The position numbers were made by a program, and so were the translations under genes. A DNA stretch of 64,000 nucleotides, taken from NCBI GenBank assembly GCA_965637545.1, contig OZ281497.1, positions 20,026,001 through 20,090,000 on the forward strand, in the 5' to 3' direction. Below the pieces are notes generated by a model. That model had not been told where the DNA came from. It saw nothing but the letters and a program-made list of their open reading frames with translations, and did no database searches. The stretch comes from Phallusia mammillata. Its lineage: Eukaryota. Below, one piece after another: positions 27,101 to 49,500 of the stretch (the first letter of the stretch is position 1; the number at the start of each line of letters is the position of its first letter).

Positions 27101-30100
27101 ATTCACTTCTATCAATGATCATGGTGCTGCAAAGTCGCAATGTGTGCTGTGTTATGCAGTGTTACAACTGGTTGTCTGTGTCTTTTTCTATTTCATGCAT
27201 ATCAGAAATTTTTTTTTTGATATTTGAGGCTTGGGTCGTGAGATGTTCATAAAACTCAGATTTGGGTCGCGGTCAAAAAAGTCTGAGAACCACTGTGTTA
27301 TAGCATAAATAAAAAAATCGATACAACCAATCAAAATTCGGTAACAAGACTTACAAGTTGCATTTTGCGCAGGGCTGCTGCCAATATAAAACGCGTTACG
27401 AATAGAATATCCCCTTTTTACCTACTATTTTACCAATCACAACAAAACGAAACTCGTCAAAATTGAATATGTACTAACTTACAAATATTTCTTTACATAC
27501 CTGGTAACATCTTGGCCAAAGTATAGAGCGTTGAGTCGTTGGCGACGAAGCAGGAGGAAAACAATAAAGCACCTTCCTTGTGATGCAGATCGGCCAACTC
27601 CGACTCGAGTAACTCGTGTAGAGATGAAGTACCCGATATGTTACGAGTACCTCCAGCACCGGCTCCGTAACGATCCACGGTTGCTCTGCATAGAAATATA
27701 TGACCATGAACGAAGACTCTTATAGGAGGTTAAATTGTAATACCCGTGTATCCATAATTTTTATAATTTTAAAAATGCGTTTTGATAATGTCTAAACAAT
27801 TTCTGAAAAATAAAATTTATAAAAATATTCCGTTTTTCAACAAGCTAATATAAATTTAAAATCGGTTGAAATATTTCGTGGTCTAAATTCTTGAAGAATA
27901 TATGGACAACACTTTTCAACAGATGTATATGAATTACATACAGAACACCGGTTACATTCAAACTGAAAGCAAAAGCGTGAACGGAAAATTCATTGAAAGC
28001 TATAACTAATCGCCCAACTTTCCGTTTTCCGTTTACCGCCGTCACACACCAGGTTATCTATTGTCATCTCAGCCGTCGCAAACAGCACCGGACAAACCAA
28101 ACGTTAATTATAACTAAAAGCACACAAGCTTCCGCAAAACCAACTGAAACCTACCGGATTGCTTCCAGAACCTTCGGGTGGCGGCTCATGCCCAGGTAGT
28201 CATTACTGCACCACACTGAAACTTTCTGAGGTAGTTCAGAATCTTCGGTAGCTGTGTAGTCTTCAGCGTATGGAAAGGTGTCGGCGCACCGGTTGACCTG
28301 ATATATACCGGTACATTGTTTAAATAGAGGTTGTGATATTGGGAAAGGGTAATGTGTACCTTTTTGAACACACGGTAGGTATGGTCTTGCTTTTTGGCAG
28401 TGATGCTTTTCTGCAGAAACTGATCGTAGTCGAAGACCTGGTCGCTCGCTAAACAGAACAACAACATATAGTTGAATCACAACGTTGCATTAAGTCAGCG
28501 CATTGTAGTGTGTAATATTTGCGATAAAATTGAAGTCGCAATGCCGTTACTAAAATTGGTCTAATTCTTAACTGTTCGTTACGTCAACTTACCAGCTTCG
28601 GGATTTACGGAGTCGCGAGTAATTACTTCTCCTGTCGGAGTCACCATCCCTTCCTTGATGGTCTCCATGATGTTGCTCGAAAAGTTATCCGTTTCATAGA
28701 GGTCTACATAAAGACTTGGCGTTAGAAAGCTGTGTCTCCATAGCAAACGTACGCAAGAGTAAAATGGCGAATATTTCCACCTTGAGGGGCTTGAACAAAA
28801 AGCTCTTCTACTCCATCAGCATCGTCAGTGACCATTCCATCCACAGCGTCCAAGGCATCTTCGAAAACATCTTCTTGTACCTCGTAGCTGGCGACAGATG
28901 CGAAGTTTTTGCCAGCGGAACAATGCAGGAAGGGGCAAATGGTGGGCGGAGCTAGTTGAGGCGTTGCTGGTTGTCGACCTCCATGCCCGCGCGCCACGGC
29001 CACTGCAACTGGATCAGCTGAAACACGACAATATTTGCGCTATTTGGTGTCTGCTCTGGCGATTCGCACGAATCCAGTCAACCAACACGAGCAAATTCCA
29101 AAGGTGACGATATTCTCGCCGCGCTTCTGCTGGTTTCGAGACCGAGTCTTGCAGCTAAAGGGTTGGGGGAGTGGGGACTTTTGCATGCCCTTGTTTGCGC
29201 AACAGTTACTGTTTCCTGTTAGGTCGTAGATACGCGTTCTGATTGCTGCTGTGATTTGTTAAAGATTACAGAACATGTTCTTAATTATATATATGGGCAG
29301 TACACAACACAATCTATTGTACATAAAATGACCTAATTAGCATTTTACAAATTTAGATTTCGTAAGTTAGTTAAAAAAATATGTCAACACGTATGAGGCG
29401 TTGGCTATGCAACTATTTACATTTCCCATGCTGAAAATAAATGTCACTTTAAAACTGTTCTAAAGCAGGGTTTAAATCTGCTACAACAAGATAATGTCAC
29501 GTAGTGGACGTCCCAAGCGCAACGGACAGTGTCCGGTCTGTGGGTGACGTTAATATCGAGTGACGTTGTCAACTGCATATAACAGGCGCATAGTATCGAT
29601 TAGGTGTCTGGTCTGGACAATATCAGCGGTGTTATAACATAGGGAAACTAATTCGTAGACCTACATTGGGCAACAAAGCGAAAATTCCACGAACCAAAAG
29701 TCATTTAAATATAGCTTACTGGAGATACCCGGTACAGACGTTCATTCAAGCATAACTATGGGCATTTTACCCAAGTGTTTGCCAGATAAAGTACAGTTAG
29801 ATCACTGGCCTGCACACACAACTAACTTTTAAGGTGTTTTTTGGTGTAAACAGTGACTTCCTTATGATTTTTAATACAAACACAACATACATCAATTGAC
29901 CTCATTGCTGTAAATAAACAAAGCCTAGGTAGTATTTACCTGCTGGCTTCATCATTTCCAGGCCTGGGGCAGCAGTTGAGAGTGGCCTAAAACCCAAATC
30001 ACCACATTAAGAAATTTACAGACATTTAAATAATCAGATGGTTAAGCATATAAGATCAACATCTAGTGCAGTGTTACTCAACATTTTACACTTTGACAAA

Positions 30101-30481
30101 AAATTTGATAAAGCATCATTCAAAGTAATATGAAAAAAAACAGTCAATGGATTTTAAGTGCCATATAAAAAAAATTTCATTATTTTCGGGTGCACCTGGC
30201 TACATTCCAGGGCCTATGAATGCTTGAGAACCACAGATGTACCGAGTTGACTAACTAATAAATGTCATCAGTTAAACCAACAAATAATCAACATTTTAAA
30301 CAAATTCAAAGAAGTCATTTTACCTTATACTTTGCAGGTTCAGCATGGCTGTATAACGAGCCATATACTCTGACATAATTGGGCATCGATAGGCATATGA
30401 CACCAAGGACTGGCCAGCTTTTTGGAGAAACTTGGTTGGGACTCTGGTCAGAAAAGGACATTTGTTGACAAATGATTCCAT
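21146..30481 (-). CDS. ALAS: 5-aminolevulinate synthase, mitochondrial (~640 aa)
   Basis: Exons (minus): 30481-30324, 29986-29940, [29248-29210 uncertain], 29017-28781, 28703-28593, 28448-28360, 28297-28155, 27685-27501, 24935-24756, 24398-24234, 22926-22658, 22124-21973, 21293-21146; all GT-AG and phase-consistent. Motifs: N-terminal [21 protein letters not shown]...[75 protein letters not shown] (PLP lysine), [16 protein letters not shown]-terminal CEFC. Confidence 0.97.
22295..22559. mobile_element. hAT (Buster-type) MITE in an ALAS intron
   Basis: TIR cagtggttcccaa / ttgggaaccactg; perfect 8-bp TSD AGTTACAT (22287-22294, 22560-22567). Confidence 0.9.
25000..25065. promoter_or_regulatory. 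Intronic cluster of ACGT-core/CRE-like motifs
   Basis: Perfect TGACGTCA at 25000-25007, and six ACGT cores within ~65 bp (25002, 25014, 25019, 25024, 25034, 25062), inside the largest ALAS intron. Confidence 0.3.
26746..27295 (+). mobile_element. Internally deleted hAT (Buster/Charlie-like) DNA transposon in an ALAS intron
   Basis: TIR cagtggttctca / tgagaaccactg; perfect TSD TGTTATAG; subterminal GGGTCG(C) repeats at both ends. ATG 27060 opens [35 protein letters not shown], resembling the Buster/Charlie transposase N-terminus (Y...fl.fGFt......pqCviC..vL). Confidence 0.92.
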
Positions 30482-31472
30482 CCTTGGGTTGCTCACTAAA
30501 ATTGAGTAGTATCGAAACTGAGATGCAATAGATTTTTGAAGTTTTCGTTTCTTGCAAGCGCGGATTCTTGGGGTTGTTGTTATATCAGACCTGAACAAAA
30601 TCAAAGGATTGGTTAAAATTGCAGAGAAATAAGTTACACTACTGTAAAAAATAGCTTAGTATGATAACTTGAAAATTACAAACATTAATTTTTGAACCAA
30701 TCAGTATGCTAACCAATAGACAAGGCTTTCCACATGACACTCTTTCGATAACAAAGTCCTCCATGCTGAACGAGAAGTAGATGTGAATAGCATATCTTGC
30801 CAGACAATTTTTTAATACAACCCAACCCAAGTCAATAATATGAAGTCAAACACTACCAGTCAATGTTTTCCCTAATGGCAAGTACTAAAGCTCTGCATAA
30901 ATGATCTAATAAATAATATTTTTGTTACTGGCCAACCAATAAACTATTGATAATGCCACTCTGGATAATACTCTGGATTTGACAGCAAGACAATAGACCT
31001 TGTTATAAACAGCTGTCCAGTGATTTAAATCCAAACGATGGCCCTGTGATGTCAGCTTAGGTTATGTAATGTTAAGAACTAACTGCCAAGCCATCTTATA
31101 TCTGTGAACTGATGTACCTGGTGTACCAATACAATGTGTCTCAAAGTTGTAGGCCAGTTATATACAACATGGTTGGGGAAAAATATGCACAGAAAAAAGT
31201 TCAGGTTCTATTGTGCATTGGTAAGTGTCAAGTCCAACTACACCTGGTAAAAATACATAGACGTCTGAATTTTGATAAACTAAATTTTAAAGAATTCAAG
31301 ACTAAAATATAAACATGCAAATATGTAGCAAGAAAACAGGACTTTTCTCAATACCAGCGGTTTGTTCCTCAGTATTTGGCAAAATGACTAGACTATCCAT
31401 TAGTTTATGCATAATATTCTTAGACATCTTAACTATTTAAAACACTCAAGGTATTAATAATACTTTACATAC

Positions 31473-31565
31473 CAGTTAAACAGAGATGATGAATGCAGAA
31501 AATTTCTTCTTCGGATTTTATATCTTCGTCAATTTGTTGCCCTTCACTGAGAACGAACAAATCGG
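31473..31565 (-). other. ALAS: Non-coding 5' exon of ALAS carrying the IRE
   Basis: Bounded by an acceptor (tttttttcacctcag| at 31566-31567) and a donor (CTG|gtatgt at 31472). Predicted to splice to the acceptor at 30496-30497, 14 nt before the ATG. Confidence 0.6.
31530..31564 (-). promoter_or_regulatory. Iron-responsive element (IRE) in the ALAS 5' UTR
   Basis: Minus strand CGATTTGTT-C-GTTCT-CAGTGA-AGGGC-AACAAATTG: CAGUGN loop, 5-bp upper stem (GUUCU/AGGGC, two G-U pairs), unpaired C bulge and a 9-bp lower stem. This is canonical IRE geometry and, from recall, very similar to the vertebrate ALAS2 IRE. Confidence 0.9.
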
Positions 31566-32537
31566 CTGAGGTGAAAAAAACTACACGGTTACATAAATAG
31601 CCCACGGCAGAACCTTTTTCGCAGATAAGGACTGGGTTAAGGCAGTACAATCACACGAACTATATCAAACAACCGGCCGACAACAAAACAGTCACTCATT
31701 TGGCTAAATGACACAGTCCACCTTTAACCTTTGGCGACACCAGATGGAACAAATTATGTGACGTCATATTTAAAAATAGGTTACTTTTTAAATGCAATAA
31801 AAGCTAAAACAAGGCTTTAAGATTAAGAGTAACTTTTGTTGCAAGATAAGAAACATTACATACATAACTTGATTTACAAAAAACTTGAGTCGAAAACACA
31901 GGGCCAATACCAAGTAGAACTAAGTACCCTCTTTCATCGACATCTAATGACAATTTTAGAGTAAAAGGACGAAGTGCAAAGAGTAAGATTTTTAAGCCTA
32001 ACCATAGAATACTAAACATATGTTTAGTATTCTATGGCCTAACTTATTGGGGCAAATGTAAATTGGTTTTGCACTCGGGTAAATTCGAGAAACGCAGACG
32101 CATTTTGGTAAACCGCTAGTGGGCAGTGAGAATTAACACAACATTACGTCACTTACGACCCACATGCCTACTGCTACTGCAGTGTCACAACTCACAAGCA
32201 GCCCGCACTTTGTTTTTGCAGTGGACAAGAGTTTGGATGGCAAAAAAAGTCTGGTTCGCAAGATCCTCGACGTGCTATGAACAGCCGATGGGTGAGCATA
32301 GGTTTGTCACGTTTCTGCTTAAAATTAATCAAGCTATTGCAACGCAATCCTAACCTAATATGCAGTTTGTCTTAAGATTTTTGGTTTATTTCCATACAAA
32401 ATGTTTGGTTTGTTTTCCTATGTGCTAAACCTTATTTCACTTCCTCATTGTTTTGTCTTAAGGTAAATATACGTGGTCAGGGCTGCAATATTATGTGTTA
32501 AAAAATCTCAACAACCCAGCTGAAATCTTGATTAACA
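31566..32537. promoter_or_regulatory. Putative bidirectional promoter between ALAS and vezatin
   Basis: ~1 kb between the divergent 5' ends; perfect CRE TGACGTCA at 31759-31766 and TTACGTCA at 32144-32151. Confidence 0.5.
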
Positions 32538-35500
32538 ATGACTATGAGGCAGCCAGAATTTTGTGATGACATAATGCCAGATGAAGATATCATTTTGGAT
32601 GTAAGTTTTTACCTTTTTCAATTCACATGTGAAATTTGCGATACTTTGTATTAAGCATTCCACACAGTTGTTTTGTGCATTTCAACCAGGGCACACCACT
32701 TCATGATTACTTGAAAAATTTGGAGAAAAATGAAAACTGGAACTTTAGAGATGAAGATTCAATACAAACAGGTCCATGCGTGAAAGATTTTCTCTATGGC
32801 ATAAATTTAAAGGTTGGGTATTGGCAAACAATATAAAAGTAACTATCAGCTCATGGGGTAACTGCAATTTGGCTTGTTTCTCTTCATAGGAATATGTTTT
32901 TGCTCAGTGGGATTTTTTGCGTCGCAAAGTGTCATCATTTTTTCCTGTTTCCCAGGATGTGCTTGTAAAAATAGTATGTACAATTTTATTGTGACATTTG
33001 TTTGATTTTGACCTTTTATGCAATATTCGTTTGATTTTGGCAGAGCAAATTTTATTACACCAAGTATGGGAATGAAATTTTAAGCAGCTCTGTTATCCTT
33101 GATGATGATTTAGACTACTTGTGTGTTCAAAGTCCGCAACACTTTTTAAGTGCAATTCAGCAGAACACACAACCTCCTTTAAACAACTACAAGTGCCTAA
33201 GATCTGCAAGGTAAAATTTCAAATAATATGAATAAAATTTTCAAAAATAACTTTCAGTTGTGAAAAAATATTTGGTGTGATATAAACTATTATGTAATGG
33301 TGGAAAATACATTTTGTGTTAACAGATATCCTGCTGTGATTGTGGCCTTCTTAGCATGTTTAATATCTTTTTGGACATCTCCATACCTGCCAAGCATTGG
33401 TCAAACTCTGGTGTTTGCTTGCTCAAGTTTTGTTTTGTTATTTAATGTCAGGTTAGAGGTAAGCACACTTCATCAACACCCTTTCCAAATCCCTCAGTTG
33501 GAGTGTGAGATAAAAATACATGTAGTGTTAATACCAGCTATTATCTGCTGTTAATATATGTATGGATTAAGCCAATAAATTGGGATCTTATGGATGTCAT
33601 CAACATGGTGATAACAAATATATACCATTTGCAGATTGTGGTAGAAATGTGGAAAAGACAGCATGAGATGAACTCACTTGCGTTAAGAGACTTTTTATTG
33701 TCAAGCAATCGCTTTCAGAAATTGATTCGAAAAAGTATTCGGCTTATTCAAGAAATGGAAGTGGTGTCTAGAGGATTTAAATTGTAAGTGTGGACTGTTT
33801 TTGTACCACAATTTATCTGTTTTGTTGTTCATGTCAATATACTGTTGAGTCTTGGCAAATGTGAATTTTATTTAATATAAAGAAACCTGAATGTAGCAAT
33901 CATTTTTTTATCCAGAATTAATGGAAAGACACCGATAACAAGAATTGAGCAAAACAACTCTACATCTCGGGCATTCTACAAGCTGCGAGTTGCTGTATTT
34001 AGGGCATCACTTCGATGCATTCTTGCATGTCGAGATGCTACTGTTCGTTTGCAAAGATTTAAACCACCAGAAAACTGTATTGATGAGTTGGAAAGAAATT
34101 TATTATGCAACATCCCATTAGAAGAACTTGGATGCTTTTTTACAGAGGTTTGTTCATTGTTGCTCTCTTTTCAAAATTGCACTTTTCATTATTCAATTCA
34201 ATAAAGTATATGTTTTTTAGTGTTGTACGACTCAAGTCAGTGAATTTATTTAAAGTTTAAGTAATGGATTTTAAGTGACTTGACAACAAACTGTGGTTTA
34301 AGCATTGTTATTTGAACATTGGATTTGTATGCTTTATGCGGAACATCATGTCACAGTTAATTGCTTCTCCAGCAAAACACATCTCTTGCCCTAATGGACC
34401 TGCAGCGTTGATTGCATTAACATCACTTGGTGTTTGTTTAATTGCAGAAGAGTAATGGAGCGATGCACATAGCCACCGACGGCTACTCGCTCGCCGTTTT
34501 GAAGCAGATGAACGAAATTCTACGTGCCCAACGCTCGGAAATGTTGACTTGCTTATCACTGACTCTTTCGGGGACCACATGGGACTTTACCAGCGATGGT
34601 AGGGATTTTGCTTTTTTACAGCAAAATCTAAATTACGTCTATGATTTATTTTTGGGGTTGGGTAGCCGTTTTGTTGGTGAAGAGCATCCATTTGCCGTCC
34701 CTCACAAGCCACATAAAATATGTTTGTCATTTTGTACTCCAGACTTGAGACGTTAAAACTTGTTAACATTTTCACAATTATTTTCAACCTTTGTCATTTA
34801 CGTTTTGTTTATATCTGTGGCAATTTGGTGTGCCATTTTATGTTTTACCGTAGCAAACACAACTCATATAAGTTAACGTAAACACAATCATTTCACGTTG
34901 CCCGTCCTTTAATGTTTAGTATGATGTCTTCTAAGCTAGCGAAGCCCAGCGTAATGAAAGATGTAATTTTAATAAAACTTCTTCGCTTATCGTAAACCGT
35001 TGCTATCCTTATATCAGTGCGGTTACATGACACACAGTGCACCATTAATGATTGACATGTTTATTCTTGGTTATGTTGGGTTATTGTTAGCGAAGTAAGC
35101 AAACTGCATGTCGATTTATCGAGCCTTTTTCCGGTGTCCAATTTAACCTATATTAACCTTTTGTTATAGGATTTCTATGCAACATGAGGCAAATTTTGTT
35201 GCGACCGACCCGCACTAACGTGGATTGTCGCCATTTGCTGCAATGTTCGTACGATATGCATAAATATCTCACCAGCACAGCAAAATCGCGAGCACAAACC
35301 CCAAGTACGTCGTTTCATTGGGGGTTCTCAAACTATCGAGTTGTAAACATTTGGTTCTGGATTTTGTAACCCACGATAAACTCTAAAATTGACAAACTGA
35401 AAATGGAAACACTTTTGAACTTATCAAAAAAGACCATTTGTTGGTAACAGTGGTTCTTATACTGTGAGCAAATACCTCCAAAGTAATATTTTGACATTTT

Positions 35501-43500: not shown

Positions 43501-46500
43501 ACTACTCCTGTGCAGGCTACTTACTCAATCTTCTATCCGTGGCAGTAATGATACGATCTTTTGTCAAGCACTAACATGTTGTGTTATTATGACAGAAAAG
43601 GCAACGAAAGCGATGGAAAAGCGGCAGCAATGGCGGCAGGGTTGTTACCTGGAAGAAAAACTGGTGTTGGAGCTATTAAAATTCCGTTACTGAATAAGAT
43701 GGAAAACAGTGAAAAGGAAAAGTTCATGGTGCAGCTTCCAGATGGATCAGTATCAGTATAGTAAGTGCCTTATTTTAGGTAGGTTAATTTAGGTAAACTT
43801 ATCCTTATTTTAATGTACATGCAGTTTCTTTAATCTGTTGTTGTATTTGGATGGGTGACCGCCTGGGAATACCGGGTGTCGTAGGCTTTTGCACATTTTA
43901 ATTCTGTAAACATTTTGTGATTGCTAACAATCCACATGCACAGACGCATCGTATCACATGGCTCTTTGGACAGTATAGCATAAAACAACTTAGTCCATGT
44001 CCTTTTACCTTTAAAAAAAACTGCGAGTCGAATTGCAGGATGTAACTTTTTGCAGTTTTATTGACACTCAAAAAATCAAAAAATAACCCCACATTTGAAA
44101 TGTGCATGGAAAATTAGTTAATTCTGCGAGATCATTGTTACGTCACAATAACAACCGTAATTACCCGCGAGCAATCGTCTACGACCATACCACGTTGAGA
44201 ACACCCCATCTCGTCCGATCTGGGAAGTTAAGCAACGTCGGGCCCGGTCAGTACTTGGATGGGTGACCGCCTGGGAATACCGGGTGTCGTAGGCTTTTGA
44301 TTTTTTCTTAGAACAAGTGGTTAGACACCAAATTTTCTACTTCAGTCATGTCAACGCAATAATTTTTTGTTGTCCACAAGTAAAACCGATATTTTTGCAG
44401 CTACCCGAAGAATGGGAACATAGCAGTAATGGCCAGTGCTGTGCCAAACTACCCAGGGCAGTTGTATGTCAACTGTTATGCAAACGACGATAAGCGGACC
44501 TGCTTAGCAGCATTTACACCATACGGAAAGGCAAGTAACACACATACATCACTGCTTCAGTCATGTCTCATTACGTTCTTATGTTGTGGCAAAGGAAAGC
44601 GTGTGTTCAACTGAGATGTTTTAAACAGTTTTTTCGCCCCTGCTTCCGCCGGTATCATTTTGCCAGACGGCCCCAAAATGAATGAAAATAATAATAACTA
44701 ATGTTGCTGCATTCAAAATTGCCGTTCATCGCGGCGATAATTTACAACCGTAGTTTTTTTTGTTCTGTATAATTAAGGGCATAGGTACACCTTTTTTCTA
44801 AATCCTTCACCAATGGATAAAAATTTCGAAACCAATTTGATAAAAGTTACAGTAGGTCCATAGTTGATTTGGTTGTTGCTGTAACCCAACATAGCACTAA
44901 CCCTTAGTCGATTTGCAGTCATGCTGTTACCACAAAGACGGCAGTCCTGGTCTAGTTCTCACCGATGAAGGAGGCTACTTGAAGTCAGAAGACGGGTCTG
45001 TGCTGAGAAAGTGGAATTGGCCAATGGCTGGGCTTAAACTTAAGGAAAACGTGGTTTTCCATCTGAACAAGGAAATGTATATCCGAGTGATGAACAAGAA
45101 CAACGTTACACTTAACTTTACTGCTAGCCGCGAGTCTGTGAAGATACCAGTGGGCGCTTTGCCCGGTCTGACCGCACCATCCCCAGCGACAGAGCAACAG
45201 GTATGCCTGGTCGAAATTTGTCACACGACATAAATATGTTTTCACTGTGATGAACCTATGCATTCGGACTTTGTTTTCCATTATTACGTTAAAAATTCTT
45301 TGCCAGTGCAAATTCGAGCACTAACCTGCCATCAGACAGTATCTAGGCCACAAAACGACATTTTCCAGTTTTGACTTGTGATATTTGATCGGCGTTACTC
45401 TGTCAAATCAGTCATTACGCATTTTGACGGACAAAATGATTTGGCTCAACGCAATTTTATATATTGTGTTCAATGCATGTGCAGCTACATTGCACTTTAC
45501 CTCTGCCAATTCGCGTCACATTGGAAAAAACGCGATGCAAAATTTATAGATCTATGTCAGGGCTCTTCAACCGGGGTTCCGCGGAACCCTAGGGTTCCGT
45601 ACTAACCTTACAGGGGTTCCGTGGTCTTTAAGGGTTGCTCAGGGGTTCGCAACGGTTTGTTGTACGAAAATGAATCATAACAATATCATTGTTGCGAAGA
45701 GCAATGCTCGCCTGTACAATCTAGTAGTTGGTTGCACCATTGATAAATTGTGACGTAATAAACATAGCCTTAATACACTCTGAAAAAATTGCGAGATAAA
45801 TGTAGAAACGACGGTTACAAGCAGTGTTTTTTTAAGGTGTTTTGGGGTGTTCAAATTTGTACAGGCGAGCTTTTAAGGTGTTCAAATTTCTCCAGCGGTT
45901 TCCCAAAATTTAGACGTGCAACTACAGTACTATTTTTTGGTATTTAATTGAAACACTTGCGGTCTCTTAAAACTACTTAGCGGTCACCCAAACCAAACCT
46001 TAAAAAAAACCTGGTTACAAGTAACACGGCAATGCGTTTCAGCGAATCGTTTAATTTAATTGAAGTAAACTTATATTTGAAGTTATAATTTAAATAAACT
46101 TAACTTATATATATTTTAATTGAAGTAAACTTATATTTTGTGCTTGGGGTGTGTTATGTAAAAATGCATGTTTTTCTTTGGTGTAGCCTATTACATTGGT
46201 TGAAACTATTTTATGGGGTTTCGCAAAGTTTGACAAGACAACTTGAGGGTTCCATGCCACTAAAAAGGTTAAAGAGATCTGATCTATGTATTTTTGTTGA
46301 CTTATATATTATACATTTATTAAGCCACGTTAGCAATGTTCGTTGCATGCAGACCGGGCTGCGTTCCGGCCTTCGTTTTTCGTCCAAGATCGCCAGCGAG
46401 TACCATGGTCTCCGTTCTGCTAAAGAAGATAAAAGCAGAGCAAGCAAACTCCGAAAATACGGACTTCGAAGATCGGTGAATACCCATTCCGTTCCATGTA

Positions 46501-49500
46501 CTTTATCCTATACAACAAAACACAACTGCATTCCATTTTTTAGATGCCATCACGGAAGACAGCTGAAGTGGAAGAATTGAAGCGTTCTTTGGAACCAGCC
46601 AACCGTTTTGAGTTCGAATCCCAGGCCGACCGGGATTTGCATCGACTTCAGGACAAGACCAAACATCTGGTTGATGAATGGATGGAACATTACAGGATAG
46701 CTGTTGGAATAAGCTCTCCCGCTCTGAAAAAGATGTTTGAAAAACCAGTGGTAATTTTATATTTTGTCAATAAATGTTTTTTTGTGTGTGTGCCCCGCTG
46801 GACTGCATAGACCAGGGGCGTGCAACTGTTTATCGCAGTGGGCCACAACTTACAGTTAAAATATTGCTGAGTGCCAGACAATAAAGCAACACATACATTT
46901 TTTAAACAATTTATTTAATAGCCCTTAGAGTACTTTTGATCAATGGGATATCTGCTAACCTTATCGTAGAATAAATCTCAATATATTTACTGCACCTATA
47001 AATCACGTACTGAATCAATTGCTAGAAAGGCAGTTCTTTCATAATGCACACTATGATGCAACAAAGGGAATATTTCGTCACAGTGGATAAAACTTTATCA
47101 CTATGTGAGGTTGTACAAAGTCAAAAATACCAGTGATGGTGTACAAATAGCAACATTCCATGCTCTATCAGTAAAAAGTATTGATAAGAAATAGAGTACT
47201 TTGAAGTCTGTGCGGGCCACAAAAATAGATGCCGCGGGCCGGACACTGGCCCGCGGGCCGTATGTTGCACGCCCCTGGCATAGACGCTTCAGGGATGATC
47301 CCAGTTATGACTTTATGTTCATCTTCTCTGACTACTGGTCAATCTGACGATCCTCCACTGCAAAGCTGAAATGTGTAACATACGAGGCTGGTAACCGCCC
47401 TCATTAGCTAACTTTTGACGTGTTCGCAGATGTGCCTGGGTAGCTCATTTGGTAGAGGACGAGTGTCAGACAGCCTCGTGTTGTGGGTTCGAATCCCACC
47501 GCATGCTATAGATTTTTCTATCTGTGCCTTGCCACATGGAAATGTTTGGTGGCCGGCCGATTCGATATTATGCCTTCAATGGACTTAGCGTACCATGATT
47601 TAAATGTTTTGTAGATATTCTGAATTTCTGTGTTGTTTGCAGCATAAGACGACACAACGTAAGATTCAAAGTGCGAGGACACGAAAACCTGCGGACGATG
47701 ACGATGAGTTAGTGGGCCAAGAAACAAAGTTTCAATCGTTCAGGTCGCCATCAGCCCCGCCGAAACACATGATGCCTGGTCCACATGTAAGTACACTTTT
47801 ACGATCATCAACCTCTGACTGAAAAATGTGCTGTTTTGAGATTAGAAATCGTGGCTCTCAGTAATACACTGGATAATAAAACAGACATTTTGTTACCCCG
47901 ACATTTCGACAAAAACGATTTGGTTAATAAAATGTACAATAAAATGTTTATGTTTTCTCCTGGTTAACATAATAAAAGTAATCTTTCTTCAAAAAAACAA
48001 CTTTTATAACAGACAACAAAAGTAACCATAAAATCGAAAACGTCAATTTCGACCAAGTAGATTAGTACAAATGGAACTTTACAAATATTTGTACACAAAA
48101 AGGCCTTTACGGTTCACTTGTTTTTGTAGTCGGTCATGATCAGGGATGAGCGACTTAAGAAGCATCCTTCAGCTATTGCTGGATCAACGTCCAAGAAGGG
48201 ACTCGACACCCATGTACGAATCGATGAAACACCATTAGACGTCAAATCATCAGGTATTATGAAGACGAAAATAATAAACTCTATCAGTGACAATTTAATT
48301 AAAACTTTGACTTGGTGTTTTAATTTATATTGTATATCGTATTTTGAGCACAACGTTAACAAAAAATTATAAAGGGCAAAAGTAAATAAATGACTGTTGC
48401 CTTTAATGCATTACTTCTTTTAATGCAGTGGTTCCCAAACTTTTTCATTATTTTGTCAAAACGGTTACTTTGTCATTATTTCGAGGGCTCGCGGTCCTTA
48501 AGCTGGAATGTGCATTTCAGGAAAACGAAAGTTGATTGCAGGATTTTCGCTAGTTATGCAAAATTGCGCATAATAATGATCTAAACTCTATAAAAGACAG
48601 CTTGTGACATTACAGACAAGACAAAAAAGCAGTACGATTGTGCGCGAACAATTGCATTTTTGATAGTTGTCTTTCAATAAAGGCTATTGTTTAGCAATGG
48701 AGACAGTCGATTTCTCAATTCTCTTGATTTAAACTTATTCAGTAGCACAAACTGACGCTAAATAAGATTATAGAATTACTTTACCCGCTTCGCGGTCCCC
48801 CCAAAATTGCCTCACGGACCCCTAAAGGACCGCGGACCCCAGTTTGGGAACCGCTGTTTTAATGTGATTAACGATGGCTTAAGCTGGCCAAGTATTTATG
48901 AAATAACAGTCTTTTCGCGTTTTGTTGCATTTGTGTTTAAGTAGTTTTTTTTTACTAAATCTAAACAGTTGCACATTAAATACATTTAAGCGTATTTTTA
49001 TATTTTCTTATGTTTTAATAGAATGTTAAAGTGAAACTCTTTGTTTAGTCTTGTCTACAATGCTTTACGCTTTTAACTGAGTCAAAACGTTTCTTGTAGC
49101 AAAGGAACCGATTTCGCATCGGACGCCTTCTACACCTGGATCCCGGCAACGACCTCATACTCTTGGTTCTCGTTCGTTCCAGCGCCCCCAGCGGTCGTCG
49201 TTGCGCACTAGTTCGAGCGCAGGAAGCAGTCCAACAAAATCGCCTGAAAAATCGTGGACGCCTGCGCCCGAATGCTGTCCTGTGGTGACTAGAAACAAAT
49301 TGCTCCACGATGGTATGTGCCGAAAATGTTTGTTGAATGTAGATCTAGATCTAGAGCCTTTGTAATGTAGTCCGTGATTTCCGCCATGAAAAGCTTACGT
49401 CTTTTGACATTATATATAGCATTGCAGGTGTTTCGCCTTATTACTATGTTGCCTTCAATGGCCTAAGCTTCAACAATGCCAAACCTCCGAAATAGATCAT

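What the first reader, a model, noticed from the sequence alone, without database searches (positions are those of the whole stretch)
31530..31564. Canonical iron-responsive element upstream of ALAS
Seen: textbook IRE fold (CAGUGA loop, 5-bp upper stem, C bulge, 9-bp lower stem) in a predicted non-coding exon ~1 kb upstream of the ALAS ATG. The sequence is nearly the same as the human ALAS2 IRE as I recall it (UUCGUUCGUCCUCAGUGCAGGGCAAC). Known: IRP binding to cap-proximal 5' IREs blocks 43S recruitment at low iron. No ORF-based annotation would show this element.
Basis: partly seen in the sequence, partly recalled or inferred. Interest (0 to 1): 0.75.

Follow-up and report, generated by a model that had tools for sequence, protein, structure and literature searches.

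The report
Iron-responsive element in sea-squirt ALAS mRNA
The hairpin is a genuine-looking iron-responsive element in the first, non-coding exon of a sea-squirt haem-synthesis gene (ALAS). It is almost identical in sequence to the human ALAS2 element, but the same kind of element was already predicted for Ciona ALAS, so this is a new example of a known thing.

Summary
On the minus strand at 31564-31530 there is a hairpin with a CAGUGA loop, a 5-bp upper stem, an unpaired C and a 9-bp lower stem. It is the only such site in the 64 kb, and about 2e-5 are expected by chance.

The downstream gene is ALAS: the exon-2 piece matches Preseq_ALAS at 3e-14. Transcript contigs from four studies place the hairpin inside exon 1 of the spliced mRNA. 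The acceptor is at 30590, not 30495.

The 23-nt core matches the published human ALAS2 IRE at 21 of 23 positions, against 9-12 for other IREs. It is therefore most likely the orthologue of the vertebrate ALAS2 element.

Two points depart from the textbook picture:
- The element lies at least 129-169 nt from the mRNA 5' end, so it is not cap-proximal.
- No trans-splicing is seen at the acceptor-like tract just upstream of it.

IRP binding and iron-dependent translation are untested. An ALAS IRE was already reported for Ciona (2007) and for Ciona and sea urchin (2014). A related ascidian-like ALAS locus shows none within 10 kb upstream. Verdict: real, and a new member of a known kind; moderate-to-low interest.

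The parts
31530..31564 (-). IRE hairpin: 9-bp lower stem, unpaired C (31555), 5-bp upper stem, loop CAGUGA
   Evidence: definition from PMC12230718
31473..31733 (-). ALAS exon 1 (non-coding). Contig 5' ends lie at 31733, 31701, 31693 and 31650. The 31693 end is followed by a template-switch-oligo tail.
   Evidence: tables 5, 7 and 8
30591..31472 (-). Intron 1 (GT..AG), 882 nt
   Evidence: joint 30588/31471 with cut +2, seen in X1, X11 and X17. X2 has a 10-nt loose end at 30591 that matches exon 1.
30324..30590 (-). ALAS exon 2: 109 nt of leader, then the ATG at 30481 and the presequence with two CP (haem-regulatory type) motifs
   Evidence: Preseq_ALAS E = 3.3e-14
31565..31580 (-). Pyrimidine tract plus CAG (acceptor-like) ending 1 nt before the IRE. 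Not used in any contig.
   Evidence: for the sequence; contigs run colinear through it
31637..31699 (-). Upstream ORF of 20 codons (AUG at 31699). It is present only in the transcripts that start upstream of it.
31589..31594 (-). Minimal uORF (AUG followed directly by a stop), 30 nt upstream of the IRE
31759..31778 (-). TATA-like tract (31767-31778) and a TGACGTCA palindrome (31759-31766), 26-45 nt upstream of the longest contig end. Putative core promoter.
   Evidence: for the sequence; the promoter reading is inference only
30714..30830 (-). Alternative 5' segment without an IRE, joined to the same exon-2 acceptor. Seen in one run only.
   Evidence: X17 record 6, joint 30588/30712

Best explanation
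This is a 5'-UTR iron-responsive element of the single ascidian ALAS gene (5-aminolevulinate synthase, the first enzyme of haem synthesis). It descends from the same ancestral element as the vertebrate ALAS2 IRE. It is transcribed as part of non-coding exon 1 and kept in the spliced mRNA, 166 nt before the AUG. The inferred mechanism is that, when iron is scarce, an iron regulatory protein (the apo form of cytosolic aconitase) binds the hairpin and lowers ALAS translation, so that porphyrin synthesis follows iron supply. Because the element lies at least 129-169 nt from the 5' end, any repression would more likely come from stalling scanning 43S complexes at a cap-distal IRE than from blocking 43S recruitment at the cap. 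What is shown here: the motif, its uniqueness in the window, the gene identity, exon inclusion, the splice sites, the approximate 5' ends and the sequence identity to the human element. What is inferred: IRP binding, the iron response and the mode of repression.
For: All four defining IRE features are present (definition in PMC12230718). The chance expectation is about 1.6e-5 per window, and no hit appeared in 300 shuffled windows scanned for the same structure with a lower stem of at least 5 bp. The host gene is ALAS (Preseq_ALAS 3.3e-14 and Aminotran_1_2 on later exons). Spliced contigs from four studies contain the hairpin colinear with exon 1 and joined to exon 2. All 18 RNA-like runs hold 0.24-0.29 of the sampled words, roughly what the two exons together would give. 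The 23-nt core is 21/23 identical to the published human eALAS IRE, and 16/18 outside the loop, against 4-7 of 16-18 for the ferroportin, DMT1, mitochondrial aconitase and TfR1 IREs. The one stem difference is C-G to U-G, which keeps the pair. In the full leader the hairpin is part of the predicted minimum-energy fold, or within 0.4 kcal/mol of it (start at 31650), with pair probabilities of 0.85-0.96 for every 5' end tried. Published SIREs surveys already call a high-quality IRE in Ciona and sea-urchin ALAS (PMC3904948).
Against: No binding or iron-response data exist. The element is cap-distal: 129 nt from a 5' end marked by a template-switch tail, and up to 169 nt from the longest contig end. 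By my own knowledge (Goossen & Hentze 1992; Paraskeva et al. 1999, the latter listed in PMC8466369), IREs more than about 60 nt from the cap regulate less well. The upper stem has two G-U pairs, and the hairpin energy is not exceptional. A related ascidian-like ALAS locus (L010-L013, N-terminal exon 69% identical) has no IRE within 10 kb upstream. Two other invertebrate ALAS loci with 10 kb of upstream sequence (L004, L006) have none either. Rfam reported no IRE here. That negative is uninformative, because two textbook ferritin IREs in L006 were missed as well.
Confidence: 0.77

Rival explanations
1. Inherited but functionally weak or idle element. The hairpin is a true descendant of the ancestral ALAS IRE and may still bind IRP, but at 129-169 nt from the cap, and behind one or two uAUGs, it no longer gives meaningful iron control of ALAS translation.
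For: Cap distance and uAUGs at 31699 and 31594. The apparent absence of the element from another ascidian-like ALAS locus suggests it is dispensable in the group.
Against: 21/23 identity to the human element, while all flanking non-coding DNA has diverged beyond detection from the relative, argues for continuing selection on the hairpin in this lineage. By my own knowledge (Paraskeva 1999), cap-distal IREs can still repress by scanning arrest.
Confidence: 0.12
2. Isoform-dependent control. The gene makes both IRE-containing and IRE-free (or cap-proximal-IRE) mRNAs, through the alternative 5' segment 30714-30830 or through rare spliced-leader addition at the acceptor-like tract 1 nt before the IRE. 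Iron control would then apply only to one mRNA class.
For: In X17 a contig joins 30830-30714 to the exon-2 acceptor, at about the same depth as the IRE-exon branch. A good pyrimidine tract plus CAG ends at 31566. Notes from elsewhere in the scan say this genome uses a 16-nt spliced leader (not checked by me).
Against: The alternative segment is seen in only one of the four runs laid, and only X17 among the 20 listed has the raised share of sampled words. Its donor is weak, and it may be a cryptic splice within unprocessed intron 1. No contig breaks or carries foreign letters at 31565. Contigs do drop rare variants, so a minor form is not excluded.
Confidence: 0.08
3. Chance hairpin with no relation to iron control.
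For: Hairpin stability is unremarkable. The bare C-N5-CAGTG core is common.
Against: The expected number of full matches per window is about 1.6e-5. The hairpin sits on the sense strand in the 5' UTR of the one gene family known to carry this very stem sequence, with 21/23 identity to the human element.
Confidence: 0.02

Closest known systems
Vertebrate ALAS2 (erythroid ALAS) 5'-UTR IRE
   Same: Same host gene family and the same element type (single unpaired C, not the ferritin UGC/C loop). 21 of 23 core nucleotides are identical to the published human sequence. In both, the element lies in the 5' UTR upstream of the exon that carries the ATG.
   Different: The human element starts at nt 13 of the reference mRNA (PMC2413145), so it is cap-proximal. 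Here it starts at least 129 nt from the 5' end and 166 nt before the AUG. The host here is a single ALAS gene whose presequence looks ALAS1-like, with CP motifs, and the animal has no erythroid lineage. Loop position 6 is A instead of C, and one upper-stem pair is U-G instead of C-G.
Predicted ALAS IRE of Ciona intestinalis (Piccinelli & Samuelsson 2007, as cited in PMC3904948; SIREs 'High' in PMC3904948 Table S3)
   Same: Same animal group (ascidians), same gene and the same 5'-UTR location. The reported distance to the start codon (181 nt) is similar to the 166 nt found here.
   Different: The Ciona call was made on genomic sequence 4 nt upstream of the annotated start. Here, inclusion in spliced mRNA is shown by transcript contigs. 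I could not obtain the Ciona sequence, so the two were not aligned.
Ferroportin FPN1A/FPN1B and DMT1 +IRE/-IRE isoforms
   Same: If the 30714-30830 segment is a true alternative first exon, the gene would make IRE-plus and IRE-minus mRNAs from alternative 5' exons. By my own knowledge, ferroportin does this.
   Different: Support here is a single contig in one run. No promoter or cap evidence exists for the alternative segment.

Membership tests
Canonical IRE (SIREs definition; Rfam IRE_I) | Six-nucleotide apical loop CAGWGH | tested here: met
   The loop is CAGUGA. Definition from PMC12230718.
Canonical IRE (SIREs definition; Rfam IRE_I) | Upper stem of five paired nucleotides | tested here: met
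   G-C, U-G, U-G, C-G, U-A. All five pair, and two are wobble pairs.
Canonical IRE (SIREs definition; Rfam IRE_I) | Unpaired C on the 5' strand, with a paired N7-N25 and a lower stem below it | tested here: met
   C at 31555 is unpaired. A U-A pair lies directly below it, followed by a 9-bp lower stem.
Canonical IRE (SIREs definition; Rfam IRE_I) | Lies on the sense strand in a UTR of the mature mRNA | tested here: met
   Spliced contigs from four studies carry it in exon 1, upstream of the ATG.
Canonical IRE (SIREs definition; Rfam IRE_I) | Match to the Rfam covariance model | tested here: inconclusive
   No IRE family was reported at the gathering threshold or at E<=10. Two textbook ferritin IREs in L006 were also not reported, so the scan as run here does not detect IREs.
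Canonical IRE (SIREs definition; Rfam IRE_I) | Binds IRP1/IRP2 and confers iron-dependent regulation | not testable with these tools
   Needs EMSA and reporter or polysome assays.
Translation-type (cap-proximal) 5' IRE | IRE within roughly 60 nt of the cap, so that IRP blocks 43S recruitment | tested here: not met
   Contig 5' ends at 31693 (with a template-switch tail), 31701 and 31733 put the IRE 129-169 nt from the 5' end. The threshold is from my own knowledge.
ALAS2-type IRE (orthologue of the vertebrate element) | Host gene is ALAS | tested here: met
   Preseq_ALAS at 3.3e-14, and Aminotran_1_2 on four later exons.
ALAS2-type IRE (orthologue of the vertebrate element) | Stem sequence shared with vertebrate ALAS2 IREs and not with other IRE classes | tested here: met
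   21/23 identical to the published human eALAS IRE, against 9-12 of 21-23 for four other human IREs (strings).
ALAS2-type IRE (orthologue of the vertebrate element) | Conserved in other tunicates | tested here: inconclusive
   The literature reports it in Ciona. The one ascidian-like locus I could fetch with 10 kb of upstream sequence (L010-L013) has none. Other contigs were too short (L001, L005).

The most novel reading that the evidence does not exclude
A single, unduplicated chordate ALAS gene may issue both IRE-bearing and IRE-free mRNAs. The routes would be exon 1 with the IRE versus the 30714-30830 segment, or a rare spliced-leader form that would put the IRE 17 nt from the cap. That would prefigure, within one gene, the split between iron-controlled ALAS2 and IRE-less ALAS1 that vertebrates achieved by gene duplication.
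Probability: 0.12. Interest if true: 0.55.

Novelty: new member of a known kind. Interest (0 to 1): 0.3.

Why it matters
It gives transcript-level support, in a second ascidian, for the view that iron control of ALAS translation predates the ALAS1/ALAS2 duplication. It also shows how strongly the stem sequence has been kept (21 of 23 nt between a sea squirt and human). The cap-distal position raises a testable question: does an ancestral-type ALAS IRE work by scanning arrest? Ascidian eggs, which take injected mRNA well, would be a convenient system for that. No ORF-based annotation would display the element, so recording it in the gene model is useful. It does not change what is known about IREs.

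Tried and rejected
- **Rfam scans** gave no IRE hit. I rejected this as evidence after the ferritin-IRE positive control in L006 also failed.
- **Trans-splicing at the acceptor-like tract** one nucleotide before the IRE. All contigs run straight through the tract, so it is at most a minor form.
The acceptor in the contigs is 30590.
- **Protein searches for relatives with the N-terminal exon.** The representative search gave mostly short genomic ORFs. The word search found nothing useful.
- **Contigs fetched through those hits.**
  - L001, L002, L003 and L005 were too short upstream.
  - L004 and L006 have 10 kb upstream and no ALAS IRE.
  - L008 and L009 are vertebrate ALAS2-like. Their ATG exon starts 14-18 nt before the ATG, and L009 has no IRE within 10 kb upstream. 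I therefore obtained no tool-derived vertebrate IRE and used the published strings instead.
  - One look-up returned no DNA, and one protein was not on record.
- **Exact-pattern scan of JGI metagenomes** for the 23-mer gave 0 hits.
- **Papers not held.** Piccinelli & Samuelsson 2007 and Paraskeva 1999 were unavailable, so what I say about them rests on citing papers and my own knowledge.
- **P0003** looks like the human ALAS1 N-terminus. I did not fetch it or compare it further.

Full report
**The hairpin.** On the minus strand, 31564-31530 reads as a 9-bp lower stem (one G-U pair), an unpaired C at 31555, a 5-bp upper stem (G-C, U-G, U-G, C-G, U-A) and the loop CAGUGA. RNAfold returns exactly this as both the minimum-energy and the centroid structure of 31575-31520.
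- The folding energy (-13 kcal/mol) is not exceptional: z = -1.5, and 15 of 200 shuffles fold as well. The case therefore rests on the motif, not on stability.
- A scan I wrote for the full IRE architecture finds this site and no other on either strand of the 64 kb. At the stricter setting (all 5 upper-stem pairs, lower stem of at least 5 bp) it found none in 300 Markov-shuffled windows.
- The analytic expectation is 8e-4 per window for a lower stem of at least 5 bp and 1.6e-5 for 9 bp. That is about 0.06 per 250 Mb of genome.
- The bare core C-N5-CAGTG is not enriched, at 28 observed against 22 expected.
- The features match the published definition: a CAGWGH loop on five pairs, an unpaired C on the 5' strand and a lower stem (PMC12230718).

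**Gene and transcript.** The ORF piece starting at the ATG at 30481 matches Pfam Preseq_ALAS (E = 3.3e-14). Four later minus-strand ORF pieces match Aminotran_1_2. The gene is 5-aminolevulinate synthase. Earlier notes of this scan, which I did not check, call the genome Phallusia mammillata, an ascidian with a 16-nt spliced leader.
- Twenty public runs of one organism hold part of 30300-31800. Eighteen hold 0.24-0.29 of the sampled words, roughly what two exons would give. Two runs hold nearly all the words and are DNA-like.
- Contigs of four runs from four studies were laid on 28600-33000. They show a spliced ALAS mRNA on the minus strand.
- Exon 1 runs from a 5' end between 31650 and 31733 down to 31473. 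Intron 1 is 31472-30591 (GT..AG). Exon 2 is 30590-30324. Further exons follow at about 29986-29940, 29017-28781 and from 28703.
- The hairpin therefore lies inside exon 1 of the mature mRNA.
The predicted acceptor (30495) is not used; the real one is 30590.
- The leader is 330-370 nt long. The IRE ends 166 nt before the AUG.

**The 5' end and position of the element.** One contig (X2) ends at 31693 and continues into 20 foreign letters. I recognise these, from my own knowledge, as the reverse complement of the 3' part of a SMART template-switch oligo ending in GGG. That marks a cDNA 5' end. Other contigs reach 31701 and 31733. A TATA-like tract and a TGACGTCA palindrome lie 26-45 nt upstream of 31733.
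- The IRE thus begins 129-169 nt from the 5' end, so it is not cap-proximal.
- The published human ALAS2 IRE occupies nt 13-36 of its reference mRNA (PMC2413145).
- The leader holds an AUG-stop at 31594. In the longer transcripts it also holds a 20-codon uORF starting at 31699.
- The acceptor-like tract that ends one nucleotide before the IRE is not used. Every contig runs colinear through it, with no break and no loose end. Contigs can hide rare forms.
- In the full leader the hairpin is in the predicted minimum-energy fold, or within 0.4 kcal/mol of it (start at 31650), with pair probabilities of 0.85-0.96 for all seven 5' ends tried. With exon 1 folded alone from 31693, a competing pairing appears with an upstream UUUGUUGUC. 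This is a prediction only.

**Relationship to known IREs.** Two papers print the human erythroid ALAS IRE (PMC12845348; PMC2413145). The 23-nt core here is identical to it at 21 positions, and at 16 of 18 outside the CAGUG.
- One difference is loop position 6 (A instead of C; both are allowed).
- The other turns a C-G pair into U-G, which keeps the pair.
- Against the ferroportin, DMT1, mitochondrial aconitase and TfR1 IREs, the same comparison gives 4-7 of 16-18 outside the loop.
- Stem sequence is free to vary between IRE classes. This identity therefore points to common descent with the vertebrate ALAS2 element and to continued selection.
- By contrast, all other non-coding DNA around the gene has diverged beyond detection from the nearest relative I could fetch.

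**Prior knowledge.** PMC3904948 (2014) ran SIREs on haem-pathway genes. It reports high-quality 5'-UTR IREs in ALAS of Ciona intestinalis (181 nt before the start codon, called on genomic sequence) and of the purple sea urchin. It also reports them in teleost ALAS1, with medium-quality hits in a sea anemone and the honey bee. The paper states that the Ciona ALAS IRE had been reported by Piccinelli & Samuelsson in 2007, and it proposes that the ancestral ALAS already had an IRE and haem-regulatory motifs. The 2007 paper is not held here. An ALAS IRE in an ascidian is therefore a known kind of thing. New here are the species, the transcript evidence for exon inclusion, the measured cap distance and the degree of identity to the human element.

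**Comparative search.** Because spliced models may only be searched exon by exon, I used the 52-residue N-terminal exon piece.
- The representative search gave 64 hits, mostly short genomic ORFs. The word search gave nothing.
- The contigs I could fetch were mostly too short upstream (L001, L002, L003, L005).
- Two invertebrate loci with 10 kb of upstream sequence (L004, L006) have no ALAS IRE.
- L006 carries two textbook IREs in front of ferritin genes just downstream of ALAS. These served as a positive control for my scanner and as a failed control for the Rfam scan.
- A scan of JGI metagenomes found four near-identical contigs (L010-L013). Each carries an ascidian-like ALAS N-terminal exon that is 69% identical, with an acceptor 2 nt before the ATG. 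None shows an IRE within up to 10 kb upstream (about 1.75 kb in L012), whether by strict, relaxed or fuzzy search or by blastn with the Phallusia exon 1.
- The element is therefore either lost, or lies further upstream, in that relative. Conservation within tunicates is patchy or unresolved.

**Mechanism and rivals.** The best-supported reading (0.77) is a functional ALAS IRE that lets an IRP reduce ALAS translation when iron is low. Given its distance from the cap, it probably acts by impeding scanning rather than by blocking 43S recruitment at the cap. This last step is inferred from my own knowledge of cap-distal IREs (Paraskeva et al. 1999, listed in PMC8466369).
- Inherited but weak or idle element: 0.12.
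- Isoform-dependent control: 0.08. In run X17 a 145-nt contig joins 30830-30714 to the exon-2 acceptor, at about the same depth as the IRE-exon branch. It was seen in only one of the four runs laid, and it may be a cryptic splice inside intron 1.
- Chance: about 0.02.

I ran no protein search with the joined full-length ALAS model. I made no further use of P0003, which looks like human ALAS1.

Noticed in passing
window 30714-30830 (-): In one run (X17) a contig joins this stretch, through a GT at 30713, to the normal exon-2 acceptor at 30590. Its depth is about equal to the IRE-exon branch in that run. It is absent from the other three runs. It carries three AUGs and no IRE. It may be an alternative first exon or a cryptic splice inside intron 1.
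   Followed up: partly
window 31565-31580 (-): A U-rich tract plus CAG, resembling a splice or trans-splice acceptor, ends one nucleotide before the IRE. Transcript contigs from four studies run straight through it.
   Followed up: partly
window 32231-32973 (+): A head-to-head neighbour gene starts about 500 bp from the ALAS 5' end. Its spliced exons are 32242-32290, 32462-32600, 32690-32810 and 32888-32973. The two genes probably share a bidirectional promoter region. The neighbour was not identified.
   Followed up: no
window 30324-30481 and 28781-29017 (-): The ALAS presequence has CP motifs of the haem-regulatory type (KCPFL, RCPIM), and a third ICPFL lies in a later exon. The single ascidian gene thus combines ALAS1-like haem motifs with an ALAS2-like IRE, as PMC3904948 noted for Ciona.
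   Followed up: partly
window 44177-44295 (+) and 47434-47507 (+): A 5S rRNA gene (114 bits) and a tRNA gene (34.9 bits) were found by Rfam.
   Followed up: no
L006 10001-16060, and the contig: In two compact invertebrate genomes, ALAS is followed within 1-4 kb by ferritin genes (three ferritin ORFs in L006, one in the contig). In L006 two of the ferritin genes carry textbook ferritin-type IREs (13462, 14546), while ALAS there has none. This is a conserved ALAS-ferritin neighbourhood.
   Followed up: no
L010-L013 (JGI metagenome contigs): Host DNA of an ascidian-like animal sits in four metagenome assemblies. The ALAS ATG exon starts 2 nt before the ATG, and no IRE lies within 10 kb upstream. 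A tandem repeat of about 83 bp lies at L011 7287-7787.
   Followed up: partly
Rfam scan tool: As run here, the Rfam scan reported neither this hairpin nor two textbook ferritin IREs, even at E<=10 on short stretches. A blank for IRE families from this tool should not be read as absence.
   Followed up: yes
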